Positions 10,188 to 64,000 of a DNA stretch of 64,000 bases are shown here, one piece after another. The notes beneath the pieces are model-generated. The model had not been told where the DNA came from. It saw nothing but the letters and a program-made list of their open reading frames with translations, and made no database searches. This DNA comes from Macrostomum hystrix (Eukaryota > Animalia > Platyhelminthes). The translations under genes were made by a program, and so were the position numbers. Where the stretch lies: positions 19,220,001 through 19,284,000 of the forward strand of contig CATNEN010000039.1 in the NCBI GenBank assembly GCA_950097015.1, read 5' to 3'. Numbering within the stretch: position 1 is the first letter of the stretch; each line of letters opens with the position of its first letter.

Positions 10188-10745
10188 GTGAATACATCAG
10201 CACGTGATATCAAACTAGCAAAATTGAAAGCGAAATCGTGTGCACATTCTGTCGCCTCTCGTGTAATGCACGTCTCTCGGACGTCAAAGGCCCCCGAATC
10301 CGATGGAGAATTCTTGTGAGCGGACAGGATCAGGCCGGCTATTACTAAGGCAACTCTCCCTGGACTCAATATTTTTAGCTAGACAGACAGAAGACATGTC
10401 CCCGAGTGAGAAACACGGGGCTTCGGGGGGGGGTAGGGAGAGAGAGGCAGAGGGAGTGTGAGAGCAGTGTACTCAGTGTGTAAGCAAGTTTCAACGTGTA
10501 CACTTTCAGCCGGGTACTGTACACCCTTACTTTAGGGTAAGGCAAACCCAAGTTTTAGTCCAGTATTTTCAAATCGACCTTGGATACAAAACAACCTTGA
10601 GTTTTCTAGCACTTTGCTGTTGCACTTCTAATAGTCTGTTTCCGTGTGTTCTCTATCGGATTTGACCGCCCTTGATCCGATCTACATGCCATTCTGCCCC
10701 TGCTGACCGAAATCAACCCGCTCTCAATAACTTATTCAGTGTGAA

Positions 10746-34400: not shown

Positions 34401-37400
34401 CTCTACTATCGATACATCCGCTCTCTACTATCAATTCATCCGCTCTCTACTATCAATTCATCTGCTCTCTACTATCGATACATCCGCTCTCTACTATCGA
34501 TTTATCCGCTCTCTACTGGCGAGACATCCGCTCTCTTCTTTTATTTTGTCTACTCTCTACTCTCTCTTGATCCACTCTCTACTTCAAATTCACCCGCTCG
34601 CTCTGTTAAGCCCGTGTTCCAGTGTCTCACAGTCGCATGTGAAGTTTTCACATTTTCACGTCGAAATGAATTTTTAATTTCATAATTTTCTTTATTTAAT
34701 AAATTGCCTGAAATTTCCTAAAGAGGAGAAGCGATTTTTCATCTCCTCAGAGTGGCCACACCTAGTATTTGAATCTCGTTAATCTCTTAACCTAGCCCCC
34801 GCCCCTGTTGGCGTGTCTAATTTTGCATCGTGACTTAGTTTCCAATTCTCCTCTCCAGTAGATTAGAAGCAGAACACACGAGCAGTGCTGAGGATTAAGA
34901 TCCAGTAATTTAGCAACCGGCATTTCCCAATCTTCAAAATCTAAAGATGTCAGCACGCAAGGCTGATGTTAAAGTGCAAATGCACACGGGAGCAGCTGCG
35001 ACACATGATTGGATCAGAGGTCAGGTTAGGGCAAATCAAAGGTTAGACTGTAGGGGAGCATTGTTTCAAAGAACATTTTAATAGTTCCTAAATGTCCGAT
35101 TCTGTATATATATCTACTAAAAAAGATGACAAACAGTTTTTAAAAAAAATTCTATACATAACTACTCACTTATTTTACTTTTCTCATACAGCTCTTAGAT
35201 TTAATAAAAATCAGTTCTGACAACTGTTGGTTCTGAGAAATGTCGGTTCTGAGAAATATCGGTTCTGAGAAATGTCGGTTCTGAGAAATGTCGGTTTTGA
35301 GAATTGTTGGTTCTGAGAAATGTCGGTTCTAAGAAATGTTCGTTCTGAGAATTGTTGGTTCTAAAAATGTCGGTTCTGACAAATGTCGCTTCCGAGAAAT
35401 GTCGGTTTTGAGAATTGTTGGTTCTGAGAAATGACGGTTTTGAGAATCGTTGGTTCTAAGAATTGTTGGTTCTGAAAAATGTTGATTCTAAGAAATATTG
35501 GTTCTGAGAATTGCTGGTTCTAAAAATGTCGGTTCTGTGAATTGTTAGTTCTGAGAATGGTTAGTTCTGAGCAATGTCGGTTCTGAGAAACGCGTTGGTT
35601 CTGAGAAATGTCTTTTCTGAGAAACGTGTTGGTTTTGAGAAATGTCGGTTCTGAGAAATGCCGGTTCTGAGAAATGATGTTTCTAAGAATTGTTAGTTCT
35701 GAGAATTGTTGGTTCTGAGAAATGACGGTTCTGAGAAATGTCGGTTCTGAGACACGTTGGTTCTGAGAAATGTTGTTTCTAAGAAATTTTGGTTCTGAGA
35801 AACGCTTTTGTTATGAGAAATGTTGGTTCTGAGAAATGTTGGTTCTGAGAAATGTTGGTTCTAAGAATTGCTGTTTCTAAGAAATGTTGGTTCTGAGAAA
35901 TGACGGTTCTGAGAAATGTCGGTTCTGAGAAACGCGTTGGTTCTGAGAAATGTCTTTTCTGAGAAACGTGTTGGTTTTGAGAAATGTCGGTTCTGAGAAA
36001 TGCCGGTTCTGAGAAATGATGTTTCTAAGAATTGTTAGTTCTGAGAATTGTTGGTTCTGAGAAATGACGGTTCTGAGAAATGTCGGTTCTGAGACACGTT
36101 GGTTCTGAGAAATGTTGTTTCTAAGAAATTTTGGTTCTGAGAAACGCTTTTGTTATGAGAAATGTTGGTTCTGAGAAATGTTGGTTCTGAGAAATGTTGG
36201 TTCTAAGAATTGCTGTTTCTAAGAAATGTTGGTTCTGAGAAATGTTGATTCTGAGAATTGTTTGTCATAAGAAACGTTGGTTTTGAGTGATGTCGGTTCG
36301 AAGAAATTTCAGTTCTGAGCTAGTGAGTTTTGCTAAATTGAAAATCGCAGGAAGGCTGTTAATAAATCACTCACCCGGTACACTGTCTGATCGTGATTGC
36401 TGCCAATACCGACTCGCACAAAGCAGCCGACAACCAGCTTGGCAAAGAATGGCATGTGCACCCAACGCTCCAGTTTGTGCCGGCTAAGCCTAATGTTAGC
36501 CAGCTGGACCAGGGAGTCCACCGGGCGCTGGCTGGCACCCTCGGCTTCGTCCTCGTCGTCGCTGCTGCGCCTGGCCGCGCTTTCGATTGCGCCGCCTTCG
36601 TCGTCGGACGTGTCTACGCTGGAATCGTCGTCATCGTCGTCGCTGCTAGTCGACGAAGATGACGATGATGACGAGGTGGCTGCAGTCTTTCGTATGCCGC
36701 TCTGCTGTCGCGACTTGCCACCTCCGCCGCCGCCGCCGTCGCTGTCACCGGAGCTGTCTGAGAACACGTCCGAGGCTTTCAATAGTTGCTTCTTTTTGCG
36801 ATCCTCGCGCTGCTGACGCAGGGCCTCCAGTTTGGAGGCCTTGGAGCCGCGCTTCTCGTCTAGAGCTTTCTTGCGCTCCACCGACGCCGTGGCAGCTGCC
36901 GGCGTCGCGTCAGAAACGTCAGAATCCGAAGCCGACGAAGCTTCAACAGCTGGCGTGTCAGTTCTGCGCTGCTGCTTCTGCTGCCGCTGGTTCTGCTGCT
37001 CGCGCTCCTTCTCGCGCATTCGCTGCTTCACCAGCTGTCGCGACCTGACTCAGGTTAGTAATTTGGGAGCAAGGGGGTTAGGCCTGGCAACACAGAACGC
37101 TTCGAAACCATTTTAGATAATCAGTAGAACTACAAATGGGGGAATTCCGTATAAAGCTCGTATACGAATATGAAATACACTAGCTCTTATAGGAAAAATC
37201 TGGAACTCGGCCAGAACCGTTGAATATCTCGACGGCCTGAAGAGATAGCGACTTGATTATTATTACAAAAGATGCGCAACAAAAAGTTGGCCCCGTGTTC
37301 TTAAGTTTCTGTTTCTTGCCTTGCTCCTTTAGGGTGCAGAAAAAAAAGTGGTCTGATCTCTCCGCTTTCTCATCTCTCCTGTGTCTCTACTCTCCCCTGT

Positions 37401-42005: not shown

Positions 42006-42596
42006 GGTATACCTGCACAAAAGCGTTGAAAAAAATGAAAGTGCCCTGTGATGATGCCGCAATTATAATAACTTGTTTCTAATCAGAAGTTGTCTTATAT
42101 AGAAGATAAAATTTGACAGCATTATGCAGTCGGTTACAACACAAAGTTACAAAATATAAATATAATGATCCAATTCCATTCCAAGAAATGGAATGAGAAT
42201 CAGATTCGCAGGATAACTATGGTTGTAATAAGTCTAATTAAAGCATAAATAAATATATAATTTAATCAACTCTTTAAGACGCACAATTACTACTAATAAA
42301 CTACAAGTAGTGAAGTGCGGATTTTACCATCATTGTCCGAACAAAAAACAATAAAGACACGAATTAAAGTCCAGACAACAAACGAGAGAAACACTATGCT
42401 AGATAAGTCGAGAATATGATGACAAGCAAAATTATAAAAACAGAATTGACTTATTAATTTCTCATTTATGAAGAAAATGTGCCAATTAAACTTTATAAAT
42501 TGTAAATATCTGAGGCAGTCTAAAGCTTTTATTATTAATAGTCAAATCTGAATTATTGCAGAAGTGAATTGAAAGAGAAACTGAAGAAGGAAACCA

Positions 42597-43860
42597 GAAA
42601 TAGGAATAGAGTGACAGAAATTGGATACAGAATGACGGAAATGGGAAACAGAGTGACAGAAATGGGAATACAGTGACAGAAATGGGAATAGAGTGACAGA
42701 AATTGGATACAGAATGACGGAAATGGGAAACAGAGTGACAGAAAAGGGAATAGAGTGACAGATATGGGAATACAGTGACAGAAATGGGAATATAGTGACA
42801 GAAATTGGATACAGAATGACGGAAATGGGAAACAGAGTGACAGAAATGGGAATACAGTGACAGAAATGGGAATAGAGTGACAGAAATTGGATACAGAATG
42901 ACGGAAATGGGAAACAGAGTGACAGAAAAGGGAATAGAGTGACAGAAATGGGAATACAGTGACAGAAATGGGAATATAGTGACAGAAATTGGATACAGAA
43001 TGACGGAAATGGGAAACAGAGTGACAGAAAAGGGAATAGAGTGACAGAAATGGGAATAGAGTGACAGAAGTGGGAAGAGAGTGACAGAAATGAGAAATAG
43101 AAAGACAGAAATGGAATAGAGCAACAGAAATGGGAATAGAGTGGCAGATATGGGAATAGAGTGACAGAAATGGGAATAGAGTGACAGATATGGGAATAGA
43201 GTGACAGAAATGGGAATAGAGTGACAAAAATGGGAATAGAAAGACAGAAATGGAATAGAGCAACAGAAATGGGAATAGAGTGGCAGATATGGGAATAGAG
43301 TGACAGAAATGGGAATAGAGTGACAAAAATGGGAATAGAAAGACAGAAATGGAATAGAACAACAGAAATGGAATAGAACAACAGAAATGGGAATAGAGTG
43401 GCAGATATGGGAATGGAGTGACAGAAATGGGAATAGAGTGACATATATGGGAATAGAGTGGCGGAAATGGGAATAGGGTGACATATATGGGAATAGGGTG
43501 ACAGAAATGGGAATAGAGCAACAGAAATGGGAATAGAGTGACAGAAATGGGAATAGAGTGACAGAAATGGAATAGAGCAACAGAAATGGGAATAGAGTGA
43601 CAGAAATGGGAATAGAGTGACAGAAATGGGAATAGAGTGACAGAAATGGGAATAGGGTGACAGAAATGGGAATAGAGCAACAGAAATGGGAATAGAGTGA
43701 CAGAAATGGGAATAGAGTGACAGAAATGGAATAGAGCAACAGAAATGGGAATAGAGTGACAGAAATGGGAATAGAGTGGCAGATATGGGAATAGAGTGAC
43801 AGAAATGGGAATAGAGTGACAGAAATGGAATAGAGCAACAGAAATGGGAATAGAGTGCCA
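42597..43860. repeat. 20-bp minisatellite (GAAATGGGAATAGAGTGACA)
   Basis: Directly visible, downstream of the ATP6AP1 stop. Confidence 0.95.
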
Positions 43861-44004
43861 GACAGAGATTATACGCAATCAGTTTTTTCTAAAGCAAATA
43901 AGTTATACCAAGCGTGAACAAAGACAATCTAGTCCTTGAAAACTACAGTTTGTTATTAATGAAACAGAAAAAGAAATCGCAGCTTTCATTCCAAAGTTCT
44001 ATAA

Positions 44005-46594
44005 TCAGTTGCCGCCCTCCTGCACATTAACCTGAATAGTCTTGCCCTTCGGGTCGTCGAATCTGTCCGGGGTGGCTACACTAACCAGCATGAGGACGCC
44101 GTACATGAGGATGACGGTGATGACTAGCAGGACTAGCAGGCTAAACCAGACTTCAACAGAGAAAAAACCGACACAGTCGTTGACCTGATTGGAGAATCGG
44201 CCACCTTTTAACACGCCAAACGGTTGCAATTGAAACTTTTTAAAGGCCAAGATTAGACTAGGCGTAGAATTGCTAGCCGAGCCGCTGATGGTGGCTAGCT
44301 GAACACCGCCGGTGCAATGATAACAGCTGCCGTTAGGCGTAGTGAAGCTGGCCAAACTCTGGGCTGTGAGGGCGGCCTCGGCCACGTTGGTACAGTTGGC
44401 CGAGCTACCTGAGCGGCAGGACAGAGCGGCGGTGCCGGAGATAACGCGCCAGATGCCAGTCTTGCTCCGGTCGCCGATGAAGTTGAGAGTGAGCTTTAGG
44501 CTGGCGATGGGAGCCGGCAGGGCTGATTGAGGATAGGCGAGGACCAGGGTTCGATTACCGCCGGCTGTGGCGCACTGGCTGAGGCTCGTGTCGATGATGC
44601 TTGAGCCGTCTGGCATCGATGGCACTGCCGGCAGAGTCTGCAACTTGCCCGACTGCTTGATGGACGCCTGCGGAATACAAATCCCGAAATTGGGAATCAC
44701 TATGAGCAGTGATTGTGGCAGCTGTTCAATGAGCAGTCATTGTGGAAGATGTTCTATGAGCAGTCATTGTGGCAGCTGTTCTATGAGCAGTGATTGTGAC
44801 AGCTGTTCTATGAGCAGTCATTGTGGAAGATGTTCTATGAGCAGTCATTGTGGCAGCTGTTCTATGAGCAGTCATTGTGGCAGCTGTCTATGAGCAGTCA
44901 TTGTGGAAGATGTTCTATGAGCAGTCATTGTGGCAGCTGTTCTATGAGCAGTGATTGTGGCAGCTGTTCAATGAGCAGTCATTGTGGAAGATGTTCTATG
45001 AGCAGTCATTGTGGCAGCTGTTCTATGAGCAGTCATTGTGGCAGCTGTCTATGAGCAGTCATTGTGGCAGCTGTTCTATGAGCAGTCATTGTGGCAGCTG
45101 TTCTATGAGCAGTCATTGTGGCAGCTGTTCTATGAGCAGTCATTGTGGCAGCTGTCTATGAGCAGTCATTGTGGCAGCTGTCTATGAGCAGTCATTGTGG
45201 CAGCTGTCTATGAGCAGTCATTGTGGCAGCTGTCTATGAGCAGTCATTGTGGCAGCTGTCTATGAGCAGTCATTGTTTAGCAGCTCCATAACAAGCTGTG
45301 AGCAGAGCTTATAGTGGAGCATTACGGATAGCTCACCTGCAGTGAGGAGTAATACAGGAGAACATCGCCTGAGCAGTTGACGAAAGTGCCGTTTGAGTTC
45401 GGCTCGGGAGTTGGCACAGCAAGCAGGTGGCGACCAGAGCCGGCGGCAGATTCAGCAGCGGCAGACGGAGTGGTTTCGCGAGCGGCAGTGAAAACCGCGA
45501 CGAATGGCAGGCCGCGAGACTAATGTGAGTAGAAAGATGCATTGAGTAGAGAATAAATGGTAATAATAGTTTTAGGCCAAAGCTGCATTAAAATGTGTGT
45601 TACTCGAGCGTAGCTCTTGACCTGAACCTCAGGGACCTAAATCTAAGGGACCTGAACCTCAGGGACCTGAACCTCAGGGACCTGAACCTCAGGGACCTGA
45701 ACCTCATGGACTTAAACCTCAGGGACATGAACCTCAGGGACCTGAACCTCAGGGACCTGAACCTCAGGGACCTGAACCTCAGGGACCTGAACCTCAGGGA
45801 CCTGAATCTCAGGGACCTGAACCTCAGGGACCTGAACCTCAGGGAACTGAAACTTAGGGACCTGAACCTCAGGCACCTGAACCTCAGGGACCTGAACCTA
45901 AGGACCTGAATCTAAGGACCTGAATCTAAGGACCTGAATCTAAGGACCTGAACCTAAGAACCTGAACCTAAGAACCTGAACCTAAGGGCCGGAGCCTGAA
46001 GATCTCAATCTGAATATCTGAAAATGAGTATGCGAAGAGTGTTCTCACCTGTAGAGCGGCGCACGCGGCGCCCAGAATCCGGTCAGCGGCGCTGGCATCG
46101 GCTGCTCGCACAATGACGAGTCGAGGAGAGCCGCCAGTTGTTGACGAGGCTTCAATAATGCGATCGACATCACCAACGGAGCCGGCAGCAACGTCTACAG
46201 GAGAACCGCGGCGCCAGTCGACGGAACGCAGCGTCGGCAGCAGGTTAGCAGCGTCGGATACAAGAAGGTGACGACCGTTTAGCTTATTCGACAATGCGGC
46301 AACGTTGACAAAGGCGGAGGAGCCCGCGTTCTCGCCGGCGAAGACGTCGCCAGATTTGGCAAAGTCAGCGAGGGCAAGGCCTTCGTCAATGTTGAAGATT
46401 AAAAGGACACCAGCGGAAGGCAAAGCGGCTACGCTGCCAGCCAAAGCGTCGGCTAGCTGCTTGGCGTTGACGCGAGCGGACGAAAGGCCGTTAAAATCGG
46501 CGACGCCGCTGTTGAGAACTACGGCGGGTACAGAGGCGGAGCAGAGGCCGGCAAGGGCCAGGAGAATGATCAGGTTCATTGGCAGCTGCGGCAT
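44005..46594 (-). CDS. ATP6AP1: V-ATPase accessory subunit Ac45/S1, about 463 aa, 3 exons
   Basis: Exons 46594-46049, 45519-45337, 44667-44005 (all phase 0). Signal peptide, [28 protein letters not shown] helix, [11 protein letters not shown]. Confidence 0.9.
44700..45276. repeat. 26-27-bp minisatellite (TATGAGCAGTCATTGTGGCAGCTGTTC) filling ATP6AP1 intron 2
   Basis: Directly visible. Confidence 0.95.
45618..45987. repeat. 14-15-bp minisatellite (GACCTGAACCTCAGG) in ATP6AP1 intron 1
   Basis: Directly visible. Confidence 0.94.
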
Positions 46595-46647
46595 TGCGGT
46601 TCCAGCTGAAAGGAAAGAAATTATAACCGTTTTTGGAACTTAAAACC

Positions 46648-47014
46648 ATAATAATAATAATAATTGCAGGAGGGCTGCGGGCAATGACACATAGTTTGGT
46701 GACACTAGACCCGCAGCCAGCGAGGAGGCAATTCTGCCCATTTCGCTGACTCCTGAGCACACACGCACACAGATACCGTACGCAGGCACACGCTCACACA
46801 GGTGTGTACATCTGCCCTGACTTTCTCATCGTCAGGCAGTGTACACTCGAACTGTGCCTTGGAGGTTGGCCCTCAAGGGCGTAAATTGCACGACAAGCCC
46901 CCAAGCCTTCTCTCCGCGGCTGCGCCCCAAAAAAATGTGGCCTCGCCGTGGAATCGAACTTAGGGACTGTGGTGCGAGTGGCAAACGCGTTAACCGCTCT
47001 GCCACCGACCCCCA
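46648..47014 (-). mobile_element. Full-length tRNA-derived SINE, family 1, with (ATT)n tail
   Basis: Minus-strand head GGGGGTCGGTGGCAGAGCGGTTAACGCG...GTTCGATTCC (A/B boxes); tail CCTGCAATTATTATTATT; other copies at 29563, 56995 and 60745. Confidence 0.82.
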
Positions 47015-47067
47015 CTTATAACCATAGAACTGGATAGATTCGGAGATGAACCTATGGAGTAGGGTAG

Positions 47068-47785
47068 ACTTGGAGCTTAATCCACGGATTAAAGGGAAGG
47101 CTTGGAGCTTAACCCACGGATTAAAGGGAAGTCTTGGAGCTTAATCCACGGATTAAAGGGAAGTATTGGAGCTTAATCCACGGATTAAAGGGAAGTCTTG
47201 GAGCTTAATCCACGGATTAAAGGGAAGGCTTGGAGCTTAACCCACGGATTAAAGGGAAGTCTTGGAGCTTAACCCACGGATTAAAGGGAAGTCTTGGAGC
47301 TTAATCCACGGATTAAAGGGAAGTCTTGGAGCTTAACCAACGGATTAAAGGGAAGTCTTGGAGCTTAATCCACGGATTAAAGGGAAGTCTTGGAGCTTAA
47401 TCCACGGATTAAAGAGTAGGTTAGGAGCTTAATCCACGGATTAAAGAGTAGGTTAGGAGCTTAATCCACGGATTAAAGAGTAGGTTAGGAGCTTAATCCA
47501 CGGATTAAAGAGTAGGTTAGGAGCTTAATCCACGGATTAAAGAGTAGGTTGGGAGCTTAATCCACGGATTAAAGAGTAGGTTAGGAGCTTAATCCACGGA
47601 TTAAAGAGTAGGTTAGGAGCTTAATCCACGGATTAAAGAGTAGGTTGGGAGCTTAATCCACGGATTAAAGAGTAGGTTAGGAGCTTAATCCACGGATTAA
47701 AGAGTAGGTTAGGAGCTTAATCCACGGATTAAAGAGTAGGTTAGGAGCTTAATCCACGGATTAAAGGGTAGGTTTGGAGCTTTAT
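47068..47785. repeat. 32-bp minisatellite with palindromic core TTAATCC-AC-GGATTAA
   Basis: About 22 copies in two variant blocks that switch at about 47410. Confidence 0.95.
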
Positions 47786-48138
47786 CTACGGATGAAATAG
47801 GTTATAGCTTAACCCATAGATATAAAAAATTGAGCTTAACTTATGGATATAAAATGGAAGATTTTGAGCTCAACCCATTGATAAATTGTTCGATATATTA
47901 CGAACCTAACTTACTGACGATCGGGTTAATTAAAACCTACTTTAAAACTAAAAACACATATCCTTTTGTACTCAACAAGAAAATGATAAGTAACTAACAG
48001 AACCTTGTTTATTATTGGATAAGCTTATCTTTTCCAGAGCATTAAGGCAAAACATAAAATTGAACTAATGTTAAAATAATGCAATTTCCAGACTAAACTA
48101 AAATTCAATCGGGCTCAGTATCTCAGTATCGATTTGCC

Positions 48139-49815
48139 CTAATAGTTTCGCCAAGGAAACGAATTGAAATCAGCTTCAAAATTTAGATTTGGCCGTTTAG
48201 TGCCGTCCGCATTGAATCGTCTGTCCAGGCTCTGCCGCATCGCATTGTCCCGACGCCAAAGGCCGGAGTATCGGTATGGCTGGCCGTCCTGCATGTGCTG
48301 ATAGCGATAATGCTGAGCAAAATATTCGCTAAATAAAAAACAGGCCTTCCATCTGCGCTCGTGATACCGCGGCATAGAGTGCACCCGGCGCTGGGCCAGG
48401 CTAGCCTCGGCTTCGGCGCTCAATTCGGGAATAATCTCCGATTTTGGCGCGTCGGCTAGCCGACGACGCATTTTAAGTTCGCCGCTTTCGTTAGCGTAGC
48501 AATTGGCGAAGTCAGCGGCACTGCTGGGCACACCGTCTGGCAGGCTCAGAGGCTGGATCTGAATTTGTTGGATTCGTGATTGACTACATAGATAATGGGG
48601 TTGAGGACTTTGAGGTTTTTAATTGAGACATTTGGGATTTGGTCAATACGGAAATCTTAAGAATTTGAATTTTAATAGGTACTTTTGGGATTTGAGAGTT
48701 CAATAAGGACATCTGGGATTTTGGTCTTCGATTGGGACAATGGGATTTTGGTTTTTAATAGTGCCATTTGGGATTTTAGACTTCAAATGGGACATTTGGG
48801 ATTTCGGTCTTTAATAGGGACATTGGGATTTAGGTTTTCTACTACTAGGAGTTTAATTTGATATTAAAATCCTTGATGAAATGGATTGTACACTAAGATT
48901 CTTAACACTAAGACACTAAGTACACTTAAGTGGGATGTTGCGATTTCAAACTAGGGTGGGATATTTTATATTTGGACTTGAGAGAGATTTTGGGATTTCG
49001 GAGTTGAGTGGGATTTTAGGATTCGGGGTTGGGTGGGATGTTGGGATTTCGTAGTTGAGTGGGATTTTGGGATTCGGGGTTGGGTGGGACGTTGGGATTT
49101 CGGACGACTTGGATGGGGTTTTGTAATTTGAGTAATGATTGGGATATTAGGATTTCGGAGTTAGGTGACAAATTGAGATTTTACTAACTCGTGGGATATT
49201 TGGATTTGAGTAACGAATGGGATATTTGGATTTGAGTAACGAATGGGATATTGGGATTTTTGTAATGACTGAGATACTGGGATTTGAGTAACAAATGGGA
49301 TATTGGGATAATTGGGATTTGTGTAATGAGTGGGATATTTGGGTGTGCTGCAGAAATTTGAACTAGAGAGATCAGCTCACATGCAGGAGGTGTTGCACCT
49401 TGCGCAGGTCCTCAGCAACACTGGGTATATTAGGCAGCGCCATCCACTGCCGCATCGGTGTATCATGCTTCATGCCCAGCTTGTACAATAGGCACTTCTC
49501 ATAATAGGTGCTGGCCCGCCAAGGCATCAGTCGACGTATCAGCAGCACTTTGGCCGGATCCGCCCTGGCTGGCAGCTCGCCATTGTCTTCTTTCTGCTTC
49601 TGGGCCCGTTCAGCTTCGGTGAGTTTAAACAGTCTCTTAGCCCAGGCCTGAGGCTCAAGGTGTTCGATAGTGCCAGGAACAGGCTTGGACTCCCAAGTGC
49701 GACCTACTAGCAGACTGGCGCTAATGTGCAACTGGCGGCTTACAGAATTGACACCTGTTGACAGCTGGCCAGCGGTTGCTTGGCAACACAGCCGAAATGT
49801 AGCTAATTGGGACAG
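48139..49815 (-). CDS. MRPL30: Mitochondrial ribosomal protein uL30m with a C-terminal extension, about 285 aa; no genomic in-frame ATG (start inferred at a splice acceptor)
   Basis: Exons 49815-49381 and 48558-48139. KVLLIRRL..YYEK..LYKLG..NIPSVAEDLRKVQHLLHIQPLSLPDGVP matches uL30m; N-terminus LSQLATFRL..RQLHISASLL is presequence-like. Confidence 0.8.
48595..49345. repeat. Degenerate TGGGATATT/TGGGATTT-rich repeat in the MRPL30 intron
   Basis: Recurring motif with irregular period. Confidence 0.7.
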
Positions 49816-51690
49816 CTGCAGTTTATTTTTAAAGTTACTTGCATGATGTTTGGAATTATATTTGCAGTCTTAGACACAGTATACGAACAGTAGATAAACA
49901 TTACTAACCATTACTAAACATTACTAACAGTAGGTATATATTTTAGTTTTCATATGTTTTTAACAACTCTTTTATACTTTTATACAACTGAAGTACTGTG
50001 TCAATATTGCTGTGACCATGTGACACTGCATCTTACTCAGATTTGCAACAACAAAAAACTGTTTTTATAAGAATAAACCTATTTATAAGAAAACAATGTT
50101 TTACAGAATAAATCGATTTTCATGTGATACAATTGTTAAAATACTTGTTTAAAACATAGCGAAAATCTAGTTTTAGAGATATCAGTATCAGAGATAAGGT
50201 TACAAGTTATTCTAAAAGTATAGAGAAATAGAAATGATTGGCAAGACAAAGAAATAGCTGTAATCCTAGATCCACTGAGACAGACTTAAACAGTGATTAT
50301 AGAGAGTAAAAAGTAAAAAGTAAGAAATAAGTATGACCAATATATTCCTACATTATTGAATTCATACTGCTAGCATTTGGACATAGAAAGGAAACACAAA
50401 ATAAATACAAAAAGTTAAACTAGAAATAGAATAACAAATAATTTTTGAGCCATCTAAAAACAACTTTAATATGTCTGATGATTTTTTAGATTAATTAATT
50501 TATTTTAAGGTTGATTATTGAAACAATTTTTAAACAGACAATTTAGCCTTTCTTTAGTTACATAGGAGGATGGACTAAATAAATATGCCAATAAAAACTA
50601 TAAGATGCTATTCAAATATTAATATTAAAAAAAATGTTTAATTATAGAATTAATTTGATAATTAATTTACCAACATTTATATGGTGTAATGGATTATTTA
50701 ATACAGTACACAGCAGTACATGAGAAGGCATAGGTAGGCAATTAAGGTCAGGCATATACAACACTTAAAATCCCACATAATAAGTCATACAGTAAAAACC
50801 TGGTACTATTGACATTATAATGTAACAACAAAATATAGCAAATTAATTGCTATGTTTCATTAGCAATCATTAGAAAATAAATGTCACTTTAGCCATCTAG
50901 CCTGAATACTAGAAGTGAAAAAATCACTAGTGGTTATAGTAATTAGGCATAGGCTTAGGCAAACAGCCTATTAGATTTATGTATATTTCATTTAAAAGCT
51001 TTGCTACCAAAATGACAAATTAAGAAAAAGTTCTCCTACACAATTAGCCTACACTAAGTTCTACACTTATATAAATTGTACTTGTTGTAGGGCTATAGCT
51101 AGCAATAGGCCTATATAAGTATAAAGCAGTAATATTGAAGAAGTGATAATGGCAGAATTAGTAGGCCTAGGCATACTAATCAATTAGCTAACTAGTAGCT
51201 TATATTGCAGCTTACATTTATTATTAATATTATTTGTGATGAATGTGAGCTAATATTAAAATAAGTCAGGCATAGTTTCAATTCCACTCTAAATAATTTT
51301 AACACACTTCAATGCATGTTTAATTACCTATTAATGAGAACCTAACAACCTAGAGGCCAACACACATACTATCAAATGCCTGAATTTTATAGAATACTTC
51401 TAGGAATTCATGTGGCACTGAGTCTTTGCCATGCATTAGTTTGGCAACATCCTAGTATTAGATTGCACATTATTATCCTCTGTGACTCTTATTTGACTTA
51501 ATTGCCTATGATTTGCTATGACTTTCCTTGCTCCTTGGCTTTGGCTCTGAGTTGTTAAGGTCCCATTGATTGTTAATGAAGCATGTGTTAAAATTATTTT
51601 TAAAAAATAGAGCAGGAAACCAAAACTGTGCCAAAACTTATATATAACATTTTCAATTTCACATAGACATATTAGCTATTTGTAAGTTGT

Positions 51691-52421
51691 TGTAATGGCA
51701 ATGTTCTACTTCCATTTGTTATATTATTTTTTTGTTTGCAAATGACAGATAACAACAAAATACAAGTTTAACAATAACAAAACGTCAGTAGTTTGGTCAG
51801 AGAGTTCTGAAAAGTCTTGGTCAGTATTTCTTCTTTTAAACCGGGTAAGTGCCTAATCCAATAGAGGAGGGCACCAAAGCTATTCTTGGGGTATAGACAG
51901 TGCCATAAGAATTCTTCGAGGTGGCTTAGAGTCGAATAGAGCAGCACTTGTGCTATGCATTTGACGCAGCTTGGCCTTTGCAAAATCTTCAGCTGCAGAA
52001 TTTCTGTGCCTTAGCTTCCTGTTCCCCCATATTTGCCATAGGGTAATGTATAAGGTATGCTTTTGCAATAGGCCTAAACAATTCTACTGAAACATCAATA
52101 TCTTTCTTTCCTCTTAATGCTTCATTGCTCCTCATGCCTCAGCTTGTAGATAATTTCTTTGACTTTCAAATTAGTTGTTCTGTGAAACACAATAGCTTGT
52201 TTCTGTCTTGCACGAGACCAAGGAAGGAGTCAAAATTCTTGTTCGGTTTTGAAGATACACTGTTTGGTTGATGATACATTAGGCTACCCTAGACATAGAT
52301 CCAAGTGTCAAGTCATGGCAAAGCCACATCAGCACAGCTTTTTCAAACTCAAAATGCATGTGTGGCACGAATTCAAACGAAAAAATAATATAACAAATGG
52401 AAGTAGAATATTGCCATTGTA
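51691..52421. mobile_element. Probable DNA-transposon remnant with TIRs of about 40 bp
   Basis: AATGGCAATGTTCTACTTCCATTTGTTATATTATTTTTT (51694) is inverted at about 52380-52418. Confidence 0.6.
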
Positions 52422-53201
52422 ACTATACATAAAATGGCTTCTCTTTAGCCAATATGGCAATAAAGCACAACTGTCTATAATTTTCTCAAGCTAAAACTTC
52501 TGATTGTTGGATATTCGTTTTGTCTTGCTGGCAAAAAAACTAAACAGGAATCAGGATAGGCTGACAAATTTGATCTTCTGCATAGGGCAAATATTGTATT
52601 TCTCTGAATAAAGGCCTCAAAATCTCAGGAAGCTAATATTAGTGATGTAAAAGAAAGCTATTGTTGAAAAAATCACTATGTCTATTACAAATAACAGATG
52701 AAACTTATATGATTAACATAGCACTTTCTTCTCACATAACGATTGAATGTATTAAATATGTCGTCATCTGTATAGCATTTTTAGACTTAAAGATTAGACA
52801 CTAAATACTTTTTTCAGATGTATCAACTAATGCAATAAATTCTCGCTATTATCCACTTTTGGCCTCTGAAATTACTATTAATTCTCATTAAAATGCAAGG
52901 CTTCATCGCGCGTTGTTGGTGGATGATGAGAGAGTATTGAGAGATGACGATCAATAATTAATTGTTGACCGTTGCAAAAAAAGAAAACCGAAAATTGAAA
53001 ACAAATAAGCAAAATTTAAACAAATATTATGCCCCAATTTAAGACGTGTTCGGATAGAAGTTCTAAGAAGCATGTATAATAAACTTTTTTCAATTCAGAA
53101 ACTTATCATTGATACTTTCTCTCACCAAATTATTGTTGCACACTATACTACCTGAAGTCTCTGCCACCGGGCTTGATTAGCTCTCTGGTAACAGCTGAAA
53201 C

Positions 53202-53258
53202 CAGGGACTAAGACTAAAACACAGGGACACAAGTGTTTTAGTGTTTTAGTAGTCCCTG
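53202..53258. mobile_element. 57-bp minimal hAT-type MITE with a perfect 8-bp TSD
   Basis: GCTGAAAC|CAGGGACTA...TAGTCCCTG|GCTGAAAC. Confidence 0.8.
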
Positions 53259-54208
53259 GCTGAAACGTATTAATTAGTCGTTCTAGAGAGTCATTGTTTT
53301 AAAGTAGCATAATAGCAGGTTGTACGAGCTATTGTCCCGCTTTATCCTCATTTTTACGACTGCTACAGTAGGCGTAGACTGATGGTTGTAGACGGATTAC
53401 ATGAAGTAACACTATTAATTGTTATTATATTTAAGTTTTTATGTATGCCGCACATAATTCGTGGTAATAAACTTTAAACGAGCTTAATGAACTGTAGTTA
53501 AGCTCCATAAAATGACTTTAAAAGCTACACCCTAAACGATAATTATAGTTTCACGCTGAAATTTAATATATTTCATTGATTCGGAACTTGGACTAGTTCT
53601 GCTCCTGCTGCTCTAGAAGACAACTAACATTAGGTGTGATAAGGTCCTGCTAACATGATTGCAAGAAAACCACATGAAGTATATGAGAAATCTGATATCT
53701 ACTAGAACTGCTCTGCTGTTCAGACCATGAGCAGACGAGCTATAGCCAGCAAATTACCTCTGAGATAAGAGTCCAACTTTGCAGTCCAGAACGAAACCAA
53801 TAGAAGAAAATTGGTAAGATTTTCCAACGACTAGTTTGCTAATGTCTTCTTTGGAAAGCTACAAACAATTAAAAACAGAAAACTATGTGTGCTTTGTGTA
53901 GTGTCCGTATATTTTATTTCTTTAACATGGTAATTCTATCAATCATAATTGGCATGAGCAAATGTTTAAAGAAGTGTAAAAATTGATGTGAAATTTGTGT
54001 GCTGTAGATGGAAATAAAATATTGGCTCGAAGTTCTTAACCACAGTTCCGAGTTTTTAAAAATAAAGTTTAAGTTTAAATAGAATCGAATTTAATTAACC
54101 GGATCCAATGAAAAACTAATTAATCAACATAACTTTTCAGCACCTCAAACACGCACTAAAAGTGTTAAACAGATCAATCAGGAGAGAGAAAACACCACCC
54201 GGTGTCAC

Positions 54209-57200
54209 CTAAGCGAACTTGTTCAGCTCGCCAGTTGGCGGAAAGTACCAATAGTTGCCAGCCACACAGCGAGTGATGCGCATAATGTCGTCGGAATGCG
54301 AATCGCTGCCCTTGCCAACCATGCGGTCCAGCATGAAGTTGAAGTTGTCCGGGCTTGCCGCATAGGCTATGAAGAATAGGCCAGATTCACCAGACACCGA
54401 GCTGGGTAGGGATGGGTGCGTTTGAGGTGAGCGGGACTCTTTGACCAAAGACAGCTGAGCTCATTCTACTCCATCCCACACCAGTCACAGACCAGCCCAT
54501 ACCCCATCCCACACCAGTCACAGACCAGCCCATACCCCATCCCACACCAGTCACATGCCTGCCCATACCCCATCCCACACCAGTCACAGACCAGCCCATA
54601 CCCCATCCCACACCAGTCACAGACCAGCCCATACCCCATCCCACACCAGTCACATGCCTGCCCATACCCCATCCCACACCAGTCACAGACCAGCCCATAC
54701 CCCATCCCACACCAGTCACAGACCAGCCCATACCCCATCCCACACCAGTCACATGCCTGCCCATACCCCATCCCACACCAGTCACAGACCAGCCCATACC
54801 CCATCCCACACCAGTCACAGACTAGCCCATACCCCATCCCACACCAGTCACAGACCAGCCCATACCCCATCCCACACCAGTCACAGATCAGCCCAAACAC
54901 CATCCCACACCAGTCACAGACCAGCCCATACCCCATCCCACACCAGTCACAGACTAGCCCATACCCCATCCCACACCATTCACAGACCAGCCCATACCCC
55001 ATCCCACACCAGTCACAGATCAGCCCATACCCCATCCCAAACCAGTCACAGACTAGCCCATACCCCATCCCACACCAGTCACAGACCAGCCCATACCCCA
55101 TCCCACACCAGTCACAGACCAGCCCATACCCCATCCCAAACCAGTCACAGACTAGCCCATACCCCATCCCACACCAGTCACAGACCAGCCCATACCCCAT
55201 CCCACACCAGTCACAGACCAGCCCATACCCCATCCCAAACTAGTCACAGACCAGCCCATACCCCATCTCACACCAGTCACAGACCAGCCCATACCCCATC
55301 CCACACCAGTCACAGACCAGCCCATACCCCATCCCACACCAGTCACAAACCAGCCCATACCCCATCCCACACCAGTCACAGATCAGCCCATACCCCATCC
55401 CCACCAGTCACAGACCAGCCCATACCCCATCCCACACCAGTCACAGACCAGCCCATACCCCATCCCACACCAGAGACACTCACCCGTAGGGCATGGACTG
55501 GCGCACGATCTCAAACTGTTTCTTCTGCTCAAACGCGTTGCCGCCAGTCATCCGAGCAACGTGGGATGAAATAGACTTGCGCCTCAGCTCAGTGCTGTCG
55601 GTAATGTCCCGGCCGACAAAGGACTCCAATTCCGCCGGCTTGGAGTCGCGAATCTTGTTCAAATCGTGAATCCATCGCTGGGTGATGACGTAACTGCCGC
55701 CGCCGGGAGCAACGGCGATTCGCTTGCGATTCTCTTCGTCGGCTGCGTTCTCCGTGCCGTCGATGAAGCCGCTCAGATCGCGACCGTTTCTGTACACGAA
55801 GCTGTAGATGTCTTCGAATGAGCGCACGGATCCCTTGGGCAGGGCGGCCACAATGGCCTGGCACAGCTCGAACAGTTTGCTAACCTGCGATACATTGCAA
55901 ATAATGTCACCATATTGTTAGATGCATGTCATATTAGTAACAATATTAATAACCATTGATTGCACCAGCTGACAGCACAGCCGCGTACAGCTGATCAGTC
56001 CATGGACTGGGGAGACGGCACACCCACCCCCCAATTACCCTAGCTGATGCTGGTAATTTAACCGTGGAACAACAAAGGGGGGAAAATCCACACCCCTGAC
56101 AATTGCTTGTGCTGCACCCGACCTCAGCAACGCAAGCAAACGAAACTCAAGAACACGGGCAACTGTTTGTTGCGCATCTTCTGAAACAATAATCAAGTCG
56201 CCAGATCTTCAGACCGTCGAGATATTCAATGGTTCTGGCCGAAGGTCAGATTTTTCCCATAAGCTCTAGTGTATTTCATGCACCCGCTATATAGGAATTA
56301 GCACTGCGTCTCAGTGCGGCCTTGCCAGGCCTTCAAAATTCATCAGCATGTCATCCGAATGTGCCTCCATCATCTCCGTCTTCGGTGGTCACCTTGGACC
56401 TCCAAGGGCTACAACAGGTGGAACTAGGCCACTATGGACACCCTGACGCAAATTTATCCAATTTCATTGATCAAGCCTAGATATTAGGCGCAGCTCAACA
56501 ACAGGACACCCTCGCCTAGTCTGTCAACCATACAGTCAACCAAACTAACGCTGTTAGCATTCAGACGCTGCGCAACAAACTTTAAAGCAAGGAGAAATCC
56601 CCATTGGTATGAAAAACGGATAGCAAAATGGCTTGATAGTCCTACTGTTAACCGCTGGTTGAACTATTTGCTCCAGTGGAGTCAGGAATCGAACCCCCGA
56701 CCTTCAAGAAAAACTACCTGATGGGACTTAGCGTGAATAAACAGGTCGCCGCCGGTGCTCGGAAGGTCGCCAAGCGGTCCGCGCCTATGCGGATAGCTGA
56801 AGTCCACGGACGCGGCGCTGCCGGCCTGGCCAACAGCGGCGCGGTAGAAGCTGTAGCCGAAGCCGACTCCGGCCCAGGTTTCATCGGACTCGTCGCGCAG
56901 ATCAGGCGGGCACACCTGCAATCATGAGATGAGATCAGTATTGGCTACATGATAAACACAGCTGCTCGTTAAAAGCCATTAACAATGACCATTATCGCGT
57001 TTGCCTCTCGCACCAAGGCCTCTCGCACCACGGCGATTCGCCGTGAGGCCGATTCGCTCGATTCCGCTGTGAGGCCACATTCATTTGGGGCGCAGCCGCG
57101 GAGAGAAGGCTTGGGGTCTTGTCATGCAATTCACGCCCTTGAGGGCCAACCTCCAAGGCACAGTGAGAGTGTACACTGCCTGAGGATGAGAAAGTCGGGG

Positions 57201-57764
57201 CAGATGTACACACCTGTGTGAGTGTGTGCTCAGTAGTTAGCGAAATGGACAGAACTGCCTTTTCGCTGGCTTTGGGTCTAGTGTCACCAAACGATGTGCC
57301 ATTGCCCGAAGCCCTTCTGCAATTATTATTATCTTGCTCAATGACATTAATTGTTATGCATTTGATTCGAACTCCCAACCTCTGAGTCAGAAGTCCATAA
57401 TTCTAACCTTATCAACTAGTTTCTGCAGACTGGCTGCAACTCGAAGAACTTCGCGCTTGTCAGCCTTGGGATCCAGGTGAATAGTTAAATAGAGCGCGTG
57501 ATCCTTTGTCTCGCTGTAGACTGTCGGCTGAACACTGTCAGTAGCGGCAGAGGCAGACGTAATTAAGCTGGACATTGGGGTCAGGCGGCGACGATGTTCA
57601 ATAAAAGCGACTGCCGTAGTGGCAGCTGCCGCGGTACCAATAGCCGCAGCCAGGAGCAGGCGAGAACTCGACGGCCGGCCAGAGGAGCCGGCGCCTGTTG
57701 ACAGGCCTCGTCTGGAGGCGAAGCGAGCGGCGGTGGCAGCAACAAGGCGGCATCGATTGAGCAT
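54209..57764 (-). CDS. DyP-type (YfeX-like) heme peroxidase with a mitochondrial-type presequence, about 382 aa, 4 exons
   Basis: Exons 57764-57408, 56915-56718, 55884-55484, 54401-54209. Motifs TGGDLFIHAKS, RDLSGFIDGTEN (GXXDG), SSHVARM (proximal His), IVRQSMPYG, GLFFIAY, YWYFP. Confidence 0.92.
54470..55472. repeat. 33-bp minisatellite (CCATCCCACACCAGTCACAGACCAGCCCATACC) filling DyP intron 3
   Basis: About 30 copies, starting about 11 nt from the donor. Confidence 0.96.
55962..56708 (-). mobile_element. Degenerate SINE family 2 copy interrupted by the TTAA MITE
   Basis: 55962-56057 and 56652-56708 match consecutive parts of 62360-62585. Confidence 0.7.
56062..56647 (-). mobile_element. 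TTAA-flanked MITE (reverse orientation) in DyP intron 2
   Basis: TTAA|CCGTGGAACAAC ... GATAGTCCTACTG|TTAA; interior is a reverse-complement homolog of 40033-40718. Confidence 0.82.
56995..57332 (+). mobile_element. tRNA-derived SINE, family 1, in DyP intron 1
   Basis: Reverse-complement homolog of 46648-47000; ends in ATTATTATT. Confidence 0.78.
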
Positions 57765-59183
57765 GGCTGCTTTTTGTTTGTGGAAATCAAAACTAAAAAG
57801 GCACAATGTTGAAGACAAAATAAATTTTCATTTGGATAATAATGGATAAGATACAAAAACATTGTGGATCACTCATCACTCACAAAATAAGATAATCTTA
57901 TCATTAGCTAGAACCTAGCTATCAATCTAGATTCTAGAACTATGATCCATGAAAGGACCATAAGAATTAAAAAAATCTTTCTTAATTGGAAGTCCTCAAA
58001 TAAAATGAGCTTATGTTTAAAGTCAAACTCCTTTCAATTTATTCCTTTTATTTTTATATTTGCTTTAACATGCTGGGTGCCTGCTTAATAGTAATGCATA
58101 AAACTTTTATAGCCAATTACAAGAGCAAAAAATTAGGCCCTAGCCTATTCTTTAGTGCCTATAGAAAGCTAGACTGAAATAAAGAGAAAAGCTTTAAAAG
58201 TATTTAAGTGTTTGCTATTTGAGAGAGAGAGAAAAGCAGGTCAAAGAATTTCCAAAAAAATAGTAAATATTTGTTAGAATAAAGTCAATGGGAAGATATT
58301 ATATCAAAGCCAGTAAAGTTATATCAACTGATTGAATATAGAGATCCTGAAAATCCTGTGTGGTAGAGCAGTAGGCCTATGTGTGCAGTTGTGCCACTTT
58401 AGTCCATTGGAAGCCTTTAAAGACTGAATAACCAGATAGCCAATTAACCCATGAGCAATAGAAGGGGAAAGTGTCTTCACTTGGACACCATATATGTCAC
58501 TACAATATATTGTGAAAGGAAGGCAGCCTAACTGTCACATACCTAAAATAAACCGATATAGGGAGAAAAAAATAACATAGCCAGTCTATGAGAAGATAAT
58601 AAGCATGTGGAAAAAGTAATAAAATAATTTAGTTTCTAAAGCTAATTCAGTGAGTAATAAAGTGAGTTTTCTATATTAGTAAAAGAGCCCTGCGACCGAA
58701 GTCAAATATTTGTGATTGTGAATCATATAATTTTTGTGAATAATTGCATAATCTGATAAGATAATGAAAAACATTTATGACTTTATGTGTAATAGTTATA
58801 ACTTTACGTTACTATTAAATTACATGTGTACAACAGTCAACAGACCTAGTATGCAAAAATGCAAAACACGAAATTATTTTAATCAGAAATCAGAAAGAAA
58901 GACTGTAGAATACTAACAATAACAACGAACATTTTATGAAGCCACATTTTACATATTTTTATACGATCCAAGTTTCAAGGACCGCTAGAAAAAGAGGACA
59001 ACTTTTAATTTGCTACATTAATGTACACATTTTAAAAGGGTGCTCCACCCAAGTGGTTTATCGCTACGAGTTAAAACAAAATGATTAGATCTACTACGAC
59101 GCTTTTAGAGTCCAGATTGATGATTATGATAACATGTGTGAAAATTTTGTGAAAAAAATATATATATTTATTTATTTTTTATA

Positions 59184-62627: not shown

Positions 62628-63404
62628 AGTCCCAATAATAATTAACAATATAATTAACATAATATACTCAACAATCATGATAGCCGACATGGTTTCATTA
62701 CAAAATTTTGTGAGCACAAAAATTATACATAAATTTGTTGTTCTTGCCACCCAACAAGCCAACGAGAATCGTTGAACATTTCGACGATGCCGATGTTTCT
62801 TCTGAATCTTTTATGAGATACAGAAAAAACTGGGTATTTGAAATACTCCCCCGTGGTATTTGTACTGTTAGTCTACTCCCCACAGAGTTGCAACATATCT
62901 TCTACATTGGTTCACAAGGTGACCCAAACGAAAACTGCGTAAATACGAGTAAAATCAAGGAACAAAAAGCATGTAGTAAGCGAGCGAGTAAAACGACTAT
63001 GGCAACCGAGCTATCAGTCTCACCTGCTCCGGGTCTGACTTGCCACAATCGGGCAGAACCTTTGAGCACAGCTTGAGAAGTTAAAATAAATATACGTATT
63101 TTAAACCAAGTTTTGGCACCAATTTGAAATAAATGAATTGCTAACCCCATTTAAATACCTGCAGCTTCTGTCATCTAAGCTAAGATTGTGAAAGCGCGCT
63201 TGAATACTAAACAAAGACTACTTTGAAAATATAAATTCAGGAAAAGTCGATTTCGTATTTGTCGCCCTACCCTGACTAAGCTTCGATGCACAAAACTGGG
63301 CAGCCTGTGATAGCCTGTCCGATTGCAGACACTGAAATTGGGATTTTAGCATAGTAGGAAAACTTATTAACGACATTAATTGATTCCATCCCATCGATAT
63401 CCAT

Positions 63405-63850
63405 ACAATCTGCTCCCATCCAATCTGCTCCCATCCAATCTGCTCCCATCCAATCTGCTCCCATCCAATCTGCTCCCATCCAATCTGCTCCCATCCAATC
63501 TGCTCCCATCCAATCTGCTCCCATCCAATCTGCTCCCATCCAATCTGCTCCCATCCAATCTGCTCCCATCCAATCTGCTCCCATCCAATCTGCTCCCATC
63601 CAATCTGCTCCCATCCAATCTGCTCCCATCCAATCTGCTCCCATCCAATCTGCTCCCATCCAATCTGCTCCCATCCAATCTGCTCCCATCCAATCTGCTC
63701 CCATCCAATCTGCTCCCATCCAATCTGCTCCCATCCAATCTGCTCCCATCCAATCTGCTCCCATCCAATCTGCTCCCATCCAATCTGCTCCCATCCAATC
63801 TGCTCCCATCCAATCTGCTCCCATCCAATCTGCTCCCATCCAATCTGCCT
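63405..63850. repeat. Perfect 15-bp minisatellite (ATCCAATCTGCTCCC)
   Basis: About 29 identical copies with degenerate ATCCC-rich flanks. Confidence 0.97.
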
Positions 63851-64000
63851 TCATTCAACCTGATCCCATCCAATCTGATCCCGTCCCATCTGATCCCTAC
63901 CCATCTGATCCCACCCTAAGTGATCCTATTGAATCCCAGATCTCATCTAATCGTATTCGATCCCAGATCCCACCCGAGCATGTTGAGCAGTGCTCACCTG

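What the first reader, a model, noticed from the sequence alone, without database searches (positions are those of the whole stretch)
49731..49860. MRPL30 has no start codon of its own; the AUG is probably supplied by the trans-spliced leader
Seen: the frame is open upstream of the uL30m domain but has no in-frame ATG nearby. The nearest ATG (49844) is out of frame and stops after 13 codons. An acceptor AAACTGCAG| at 49816 is exactly in frame, and adding AUG gives MLSQLATFRLCCQATAGQLSTGVNSVSRQLHISASLL, an acid-free presequence with an R-x-L-H-x-S cleavage-like motif. Known: flatworm spliced leaders end in AUG, and that AUG can initiate translation. Inference: this mitoribosomal gene depends on SL trans-splicing for its initiator and for an intact targeting signal.
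Basis: partly seen in the sequence, partly recalled or inferred. Interest (0 to 1): 0.82.

Follow-up and report, generated by a model that had tools for sequence, protein, structure and literature searches.

The report
Start codon borrowed from spliced leader
A flatworm (Macrostomum hystrix) gene for mitochondrial ribosomal protein uL30m has no start codon of its own and most likely takes it from the AUG that ends the trans-spliced leader, which is a known flatworm trick and here a new, well-supported example.

Summary
On the minus strand, a frame is open from an in-frame TAA (49872-49870) through a CTGCAG acceptor (AG 49817-49816) into the coding exon. The first in-frame ATG is codon 97, inside the L30 fold. 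ATG 49844 is out of frame and stops after 13 codons.

The gene is uL30m/MRPL30. A flatworm family profile hits only mammalian uL30m in the PDB (E 4e-21). The gene has two exons, not one: 49815-49381 and 48558-48139.

The genome is M. hystrix. Its SL RNA genes end in ...TTGCATG|GTAAG.

CTGCAG is the only AG nearby that fits the published Macrostomum trans-acceptor motif [T/C]TNCAG, and it is in frame.

The strongest support is indirect. The three M. lignano orthologue models lack a Met, and the two RNA-seq-based ones begin at exactly the orthologous codon. They come from an annotation that cuts transcripts at SL sites and trims the leader.

No transcript data for this locus could be reached. 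A cis-spliced upstream ATG exon is therefore unlikely but not excluded.

The mechanism has been known since 2006, so this is a new member of a known kind. The scan found the same thing before, in two other genes of this genome (s1-316733).

The parts
49816..49872 (-). 3' end of the outron. It runs from the in-frame TAA (49872-49870) through 18 open, ATG-less, AT-rich codons. It contains the out-of-frame ATG 49844-49842, which trans-splicing would remove.
   Evidence: GC is 0.30 in the 120 nt upstream of the acceptor and 0.53 in the first 120 nt of the exon.
49816..49821 (-). Trans-splice acceptor CTGCAG (AG = 49817-49816); the next base starts a codon.
   Evidence: It fits [T/C]TNCAG, the top motif at M. 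lignano SL acceptors (PMC8629364). It is the only fitting AG in 49872-49695 and is in frame. Its codons CTG CAG align with L3-Q4 of M. lignano P0015.
49729..49815 (-). Codons 1-29 of exon 1: the putative mitochondrial presequence, up to the R27-Q-L|H-I-S site (R-3 type).
   Evidence: No D or E, two R, 24% S+T. R27 is nearly invariant across 13 flatworm uL30m in an R-x-[LFY]-[HTSN] context. That this is a cleavage site is inferred, not tested.
49381..49815 (-). Exon 1 of the uL30m (MRPL30) gene, 145 codons. It holds the presequence, the flatworm-conserved GRTWESKPVPG...AWAKRLF block and the L30 fold (about codons 85-145).
   Evidence: 68% identity to M. lignano P0015. Window protein against PDB: uL30m only, E 0.008. 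Family profile against PDB: uL30m only, E 4e-21.
48559..49380 (-). Intron of 822 nt, from the GTGAGC donor to the ATTCAG acceptor. Most of it is 26-83-nt tandem repeats.
48139..48558 (-). Exon 2, 139 codons plus TAG: the C-terminal extension shared with other flatworm uL30m (...YRYSGLWRRD...FEADFNSFPWRNY).
   Evidence: 73% identity to residues 138-275 of M. lignano P0001, E 7e-80; alignment.

Best explanation
This is the single-copy, two-exon nuclear gene for mitochondrial ribosomal protein uL30m of Macrostomum hystrix. Its pre-mRNA is trans-spliced at the CTGCAG acceptor (AG 49817-49816) to the Macrostomum spliced leader. That leader ends in AUG, and the AUG lands directly in front of codon CTG 49815-49813, in frame. 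Ribosomes start at the donated AUG and make a protein of about 285 residues. Its genome-encoded, acid-free N-terminus acts as a mitochondrial presequence, probably cut after an R-x-L site about 30 residues in. Trans-splicing also removes the out-of-frame ATG 49844.

Shown here: the sequence anatomy, the SL RNA genes, the gene identity and the orthologous 5' ends of the M. lignano models.

Inferred: trans-splicing at this site in M. hystrix, initiation at the SL AUG, and import and cleavage.
For: (1) There is no genome-encoded in-frame ATG between TAA 49872 and codon 97, which lies inside the L30 fold.

(2) The genome has at least 19 exact copies of ...ACTCAATTTATTGCATG|GTAAG, against 0 for the reversed control. 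The 35-nt leader is identical to the M. lignano SL printed in PMC8629364. The RNA folds into three hairpins, z -3.4. The M. hystrix genome paper itself says the SL likely contains the final ATG as a translation start codon, and that 10-20% of genes are SL trans-spliced (PMC10468722).

(3) CTGCAG fits the [T/C]TNCAG trans-acceptor motif. It is the only fitting AG nearby and is in frame. GC jumps from 0.30 to 0.53 at this point.

(4) M. lignano orthologues PAA46715/PAA76485 and PAA63794 are '5'-partial' and begin PSPLTSIRLC... with no Met. UniRef A0A1I8HPR8 begins YCLQ-PSPL.... BLASTP puts window residue 1 opposite the first residue of the PAA models, and the window's upstream CTG CAG opposite L-Q. 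The Mlig_3_7 annotation cuts transcripts at SL-read peaks, trims the leader and calls ORFs with TransDecoder (PMC5730564). That procedure yields exactly such Met-less models.

(5) With the donated Met, the N-terminus is 39 residues long before the conserved RTxES block. Other flatworm uL30m have 27-35 residues there.

(6) No phase-0 ATG...|GTRAG micro-exon lies in the 4.4 kb upstream; 1.3-1.7 are expected by chance.

(7) Use of the flatworm SL AUG as initiator is established. More than 40 S. mansoni cDNAs need it (Cheng et al. 2006, as cited in PMC9851317).
Against:
- I could not confirm that the M. lignano gene is flagged as trans-spliced. Supplement searches were blank.
- The tract before the acceptor is A-rich, with only 7 of 17 pyrimidines.
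- Weak-donor ATG micro-exons occur upstream at chance frequency, so sequence alone cannot exclude them.
- A simple amphipathic-helix measure on the presequence is no better than shuffles.
- Parasitic flatworms share acceptors between cis- and trans-splicing (PMC12582326).
Confidence: 0.8

Rival explanations
1. A small cis-spliced upstream exon, not recognisable from sequence, carries the ATG and perhaps a few codons. It splices to the same AG at 49816, either always or as an alternative to trans-splicing.
For: An earlier follow-up in this genome (s1-316733) found one such case among three claimed SL-AUG genes. Acceptors are shared between cis- and trans-splicing in parasitic flatworms (PMC12582326). 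With relaxed donors, 3-4 phase-0 candidates exist in the 4.4 kb upstream.
Against: Those candidates are no more frequent than in shuffled sequence, and none has the GTRAG donor found at about two thirds of M. lignano cis-donor sites (122,399 of 187,627 regions). All three M. lignano models, built from RNA-seq or from the genome, lack any upstream exon or Met.
Confidence: 0.09
2. The mRNA is not trans-spliced, or the SL AUG is skipped. Translation then starts at a near-cognate codon such as CTG 49821 or CTG 49815, or at Met codon 97.
For: In-frame CTG codons flank the acceptor. Non-AUG starts are documented in SL-using taxa (PMC9851317).
Against: Starting at codon 97 would delete the presequence, the conserved N-terminal block and the first strand of the L30 fold. 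An unspliced mRNA would keep the out-of-frame ATG 49844 just upstream. The sharp composition break and the conserved acceptor argue for splicing at this point.
Confidence: 0.05
3. Artefact or decay: a 1-bp assembly error hides an in-frame ATG 49844, or the locus is a pseudogene.
For: ATG 49844 lies only 27 nt upstream of the acceptor.
Against: The assembly has Merqury QV 42.8 (PMC10468722). The sequence between ATG 49844 and the acceptor is 26-34% GC, unlike the exon. M. lignano has Y-C-L-Q in the four codons before its acceptor and no Met there. The gene is the only copy in the genome. Both exons are intact and 68-73% identical to M. lignano, with the family's invariant residues kept.
Confidence: 0.03

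Closest known systems
Schistosoma mansoni mRNAs that use the spliced leader's 3'-terminal AUG as initiator (Cheng, Cohen, Ndegwa & Davis 2006, J Biol Chem 281:733, as summarised in PMC9851317 and PMC12582326)
   Same: The flatworm SL ends in AUG. The acceptor places that AUG in frame with an ORF that has no start codon of its own, so the leader donates only the Met.
   Different: The species is free-living (Macrostomorpha) and the gene is different. Here the evidence is genomic and comparative only, whereas the schistosome cases rest on cDNAs and translation assays.
Macrostomum lignano Mlig034289.g1/.g3 (PAA63794, PAA46715/PAA76485; UniRef A0A1I8HPR8 '39S ribosomal protein L30, mitochondrial')
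   Same: This is the orthologue, at 68-73% identity. Its C-terminus is co-linear and ends at the same residues (...FPWRNY). It is Met-less, starts at the orthologous codon, and has Leu-Gln codons just before it.
   Different: The M. lignano presequence is 10 residues shorter, and the gene is present in several copies in that polyploid genome. Its databases list it only as 'hypothetical, partial', with no comment on the start codon.
slORFs (PMC9851317): ORFs created or completed by start codons inside spliced leaders
   Same: Same concept: the SL supplies the initiation codon.
   Different: slORFfinder calls slORFs from SL-bearing RNA-seq reads and ribosome footprints. Neither data type was available here.
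Mammalian uL30m (for example PDB 3j7y chain Z)
   Same: The L30 fold region aligns (profile E 4e-21), and the protein has an N-terminal mitochondrial extension.
   Different: The flatworm proteins carry an extra conserved N-terminal block (RTxESKPxPG...AWAKRLF) and a roughly 100-residue C-terminal extension ending in ...FPW-x-x-[YF]. The mammalian chains are only 160-161 residues long and lack this C-terminal extension.

Membership tests
uL30m / MRPL30 (mitochondrial large-subunit ribosomal protein L30) | Sequence similarity of the core to the L30 fold of solved uL30m | tested here: met
   Window exon 1 against PDB: all 7 hits are uL30m, best E 0.008. A profile of the window protein plus 12 flatworm relatives: only uL30m, E 4e-21.
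uL30m / MRPL30 (mitochondrial large-subunit ribosomal protein L30) | Match to Pfam Ribosomal_L30 (PF00327) | tested here: inconclusive
   The window protein has no Pfam hit even at E 1. Four of 13 family members match PF00327, best E 6.5e-6.
uL30m / MRPL30 (mitochondrial large-subunit ribosomal protein L30) | Orthology to proteins named uL30m in related animals | tested here: met
   Hits in M. lignano (E 7e-54), Opisthorchis, Paragonimus, Trichobilharzia and Fasciola, all named 39S ribosomal protein L30 / uL30m. Single copy in the genome.
uL30m / MRPL30 (mitochondrial large-subunit ribosomal protein L30) | Mitochondrial targeting presequence | tested here: inconclusive
   The composition fits: no acidic residue in 41 residues, basic and S/T-rich, with a conserved R-x-[LFY] site. 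The amphipathicity score is not above shuffles. No dedicated predictor was available.
Flatworm genes initiated at the spliced-leader AUG | The organism's SL RNA ends in AUG directly before the GU donor | tested here: met
   At least 19 exact gene copies with ...TTGCATG|GTAAG, a three-hairpin fold, and the statement in PMC10468722.
Flatworm genes initiated at the spliced-leader AUG | No genome-encoded in-frame AUG upstream of the conserved protein | tested here: met
   In-frame TAA at 49872; the first in-frame ATG is codon 97, inside the fold.
Flatworm genes initiated at the spliced-leader AUG | An acceptor that puts the SL AUG in frame with the ORF | tested here: met
   CTGCAG| at 49816 is in frame 0 and fits [T/C]TNCAG. 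It is orthologous to the 5' end of the M. lignano models.
Flatworm genes initiated at the spliced-leader AUG | Mature mRNA carries the leader at that acceptor | not testable with these tools
Only indirect support, from Met-less M. lignano models made by an SL-site-cutting pipeline.
Flatworm genes initiated at the spliced-leader AUG | Translation actually starts at the SL AUG | not testable with these tools
   This needs ribosome profiling, N-terminal proteomics or a reporter.

The most novel reading that the evidence does not exclude
Loss of the genomic start codon of MRPL30 predates the split of M. lignano and M. hystrix and has been kept since. Production of a core mitoribosomal protein would then be obligatorily tied to SL trans-splicing. 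Other ATG-less mitochondrial genes have been flagged in this genome (mt-TyrRS; COQ7 is claimed but unchecked). Together they could reflect a preferential, possibly regulatory, coupling between trans-splicing and nuclear-encoded mitochondrial proteins, rather than random in-frame accidents.
Probability: 0.12. Interest if true: 0.55.

Novelty: new member of a known kind. Interest (0 to 1): 0.3.

Why it matters
- Annotation: gene finders that insist on a genomic ATG will truncate or miss this gene. The M. lignano orthologues sit in GenBank as 'hypothetical protein, partial'.
- Evolution: the ATG-less state and the acceptor are shared by two Macrostomum species. The trematode and cestode orthologue models begin with Met, though whether that codon is genome-encoded was not checked. 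This gives a dated example of a gene becoming dependent on the leader's AUG.
- Experiment: M. lignano is transgenic-competent, so this short outron plus presequence is a convenient test case for SL-AUG initiation in a free-living flatworm.

None of this changes the known picture of flatworm trans-splicing.

Tried and rejected
- Pfam on the window protein: no hit.
- Word search of 5.8 billion proteins with exon 1: nothing. This was because the 275-aa orthologue falls outside the length window.
- The same search with the M. lignano protein found only itself. No other Macrostomum or Logan transcript products are held.
The DNA-level comparison of the two acceptors could not be made.
- Searches for Mlig034289 or MRPL30 in papers and in the supplements of PMC5816591 and PMC5730564: blank.
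- Cheng et al. 2006 is not held. It is cited only through PMC9851317 and PMC12582326.
- Scan for upstream ATG micro-exons: none with a consensus donor, and weak ones only at chance level.
- Hydrophobic-moment test of the presequence: uninformative.
- Rfam on 44000-58000 of the window: nothing.
- A single-exon model ending ...HLLHVS* was rejected in favour of the two-exon model.
- The spliced model was searched exon by exon only.
- No contig looked human.

Full report
**Organism.** The window is G000:C39:19220001-19284000. G000 has 220,453,370 bases in 42 contigs. These are exactly the figures given for the Macrostomum hystrix assembly in Table 1 of Wiberg et al. 2023 (PMC10468722). Earlier agents of this scan named the same species.

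**The observation.** The gene lies on the minus strand.
- An in-frame TAA sits at 49872-49870. It is followed by 18 open codons with no ATG (DCKYNSKHHASNFKNKLQ).
- Then comes ...AAACTGCAG|, with AG at 49817-49816.
- The exon starts at 49815 and reads LSQLATFRLCCQATAGQLSTGVNSVSRQLHISASLLVGRTWESKP....
- ATG 49844-49842 is in another frame and stops after 13 codons.
- The first in-frame Met is codon 97, within RRLMPWR. That position aligns inside the L30 fold of human uL30m.
- GC rises from 0.30 in the 120 nt before the AG to 0.53 in the first 120 nt after it.

**What the gene is.** Pfam finds nothing in the window protein, and the word search found nothing. I therefore used the exhaustive HMMER search. 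It returned 13 proteins.
- The best hit (E 7e-54, 73% identity) is M. lignano 'BOX15_Mlig034289g3, partial'. Its cluster mate in UniRef is named '39S ribosomal protein L30, mitochondrial'.
- Other named hits are uL30m of Paragonimus, Opisthorchis, Trichobilharzia and Fasciola. Unnamed products come from cestodes and a monogenean.
- A profile of these proteins hits only mammalian uL30m among all PDB chains, at E 4e-21.
- Four of the 13 match Pfam Ribosomal_L30.
- The gene is single-copy in the genome.

**Gene structure (a correction to the finding).** The flatworm proteins continue about 140 residues beyond the L30 fold.
- In the window, exon 1 ends at ...QHLLH with a CAT|GTGAGC donor (49381/49380).
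- An 822-nt intron follows, most of it tandem repeats.
- Exon 2 starts after ATTCAG at 48558 and runs to TAG at 48141-48139.
- Exon 2 is 73% identical to residues 138-275 of the M. lignano protein, E 7e-80.
- Exon 1 is 68% identical to the M. lignano protein's N-terminal half.

The joined product was never assembled or searched.

**The leader.** PMC8629364 prints the 35-nt M. lignano SL, which ends in ATG and is followed by a GTAAG donor.
- A 22-nt pattern spanning the SL 3' end and donor occurs 19 times exactly in G000, plus twice with two mismatches. The reversed control occurs 0 times.
- The copies carry the full 35-nt leader, identical to that of M. lignano.
- The roughly 110-nt RNA folds into three hairpins with a U-rich single-stranded stretch between the last two, z -3.4.

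**The acceptor.** The top motif at 21,754 M. lignano SL acceptor sites is [T/C]TNCAG. Of the 13 AG dinucleotides between the upstream stop and codon 40, only CTGCAG at 49816 fits, and it is in frame 0. Its polypyrimidine tract is poor, with 7 of 17 pyrimidines.

**Comparative evidence.** This is the strongest argument, though an indirect one.
- Two M. lignano GenBank models (three accessions: PAA46715/PAA76485 and PAA63794) begin PSPLTSIRLC... without a Met, and end at the same C-terminus as the window gene.
- An independent UniRef model begins YCLQ-PSPL..., also without a Met.
- BLASTP aligns window residue 2 with residue 6 of that model. Window residue 1 therefore faces the first residue of the GenBank models, and the window's upstream codons CTG CAG (L Q) face its L3-Q4.
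- The Mlig_3_7 annotation was made by mapping SL-containing reads, trimming the leader, cutting transcripts at the SL peaks (TBONE) and calling ORFs with TransDecoder (PMC5730564).
- A gene whose only start codon is the leader's AUG would come out of that pipeline exactly like this. It would be 5'-partial, with its first codon right after a CAG.
- An upstream cis exon with an ATG would have been joined by the RNA-seq assemblers. It is absent from all models.

**N-terminus.** Across the 13 flatworm proteins, an Arg (window R27) in R-x-[LFY]-[HTSN] is nearly invariant. This fits an R-3 type processing site, but that reading is my inference.
- The window presequence has no acidic residue in 41 positions and two Arg.
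- With a donated Met it is 39 residues long before the conserved RTxES block. The orthologues whose models begin with Met have 27-35 residues there.
- A simple hydrophobic-moment test was uninformative.
- The leader contributes only the Met, so the targeting signal itself is genome-encoded.

**Rivals.**
- *Upstream cis micro-exon.* I scanned the 4.4 kb upstream, as far as the DyP peroxidase gene region. There are 0 phase-0 ATG...|GTRAG candidates, against 1.3-1.7 in shuffles. Relaxed donors give chance-level numbers. This rival has no positive support but cannot be excluded without RNA data. An earlier follow-up in this genome did find one such case (s1-316733).
- *Non-AUG or downstream initiation.* This would lose conserved parts of the protein, or would have to bypass ATG 49844.
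- *Assembly error.* This is unlikely at QV 42.8. The AT-rich sequence in question is also not conserved as coding in M. lignano.
- *Pseudogene.* This is unlikely for an intact, conserved, single-copy gene.

**Comparison with what is known.** All reported flatworm SLs end in AUG (PMC12582326). Cheng et al. 2006 showed that this AUG serves as initiator and that more than 40 S. mansoni cDNAs need it (as cited in PMC9851317). I could not read the original paper. The present case is the same mechanism in a free-living macrostomid and in a new gene, and the dependence appears to be shared by two Macrostomum species. The scan has already reported the same phenomenon for two other genes of this genome (s1-316733).

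**What could not be done.**
- No M. hystrix transcript products are in the protein collections.
- Supplement searches for the M. lignano gene id were blank.

**Verdict.** The case is a new member of a known kind, of modest interest.

Noticed in passing
L012 (G000:C17:2700-12699) and L003 (G000:C15:8225-11246): The SL RNA genes sit inside the 45S rDNA tandem unit (about 11.6 kb; arrays on contigs 15, 17 and 42). On one strand the order is 18S, 5.8S, 28S, then a U1 snRNA gene, then the SL RNA gene about 300 nt downstream of U1. One more exact SL copy lies alone on contig 1 (L002). Linkage of SL RNA and U1 genes to the large rDNA unit seems unusual.
   Followed up: partly
window 48559-49380: Most of the only intron of the MRPL30 gene is made of 26-83-nt GGGATTT-rich tandem repeats.
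   Followed up: partly
window 55480-55851 (-) and 57387-57818 (-): An ORF matches the Dyp-type peroxidase C-terminal domain (PF20628, E 9e-18). A bacterial-type DyP in an animal genome was already flagged in s1-845809.
   Followed up: no
window 44005-44700 (-) and 45968-46594 (-): A V-ATPase accessory subunit Ac45/VOA1 gene: a TM domain (PF20520, E 6e-11), with a signal-peptide-like exon that has its own ATG at 46594. It lies 1.5 kb downstream of MRPL30 on the same strand.
   Followed up: no
window 1595-8752, 10713-11888, 32318-34677, 42486-43878, 54387-55574, 63276-63919: Long arrays of short tandem repeats give spurious ORFs of 200-660 aa in several frames on both strands. These are a trap for ORF-based annotation.
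   Followed up: no
P0015 (M. lignano UniRef A0A1I8HPR8), residues 1-4: This model starts Y-C-L-Q. The in-frame reading of the SL's last codons would be ...Y-C-M, so the shared Y-C is probably coincidence. I could not check, because the M. lignano DNA was out of reach.
   Followed up: no
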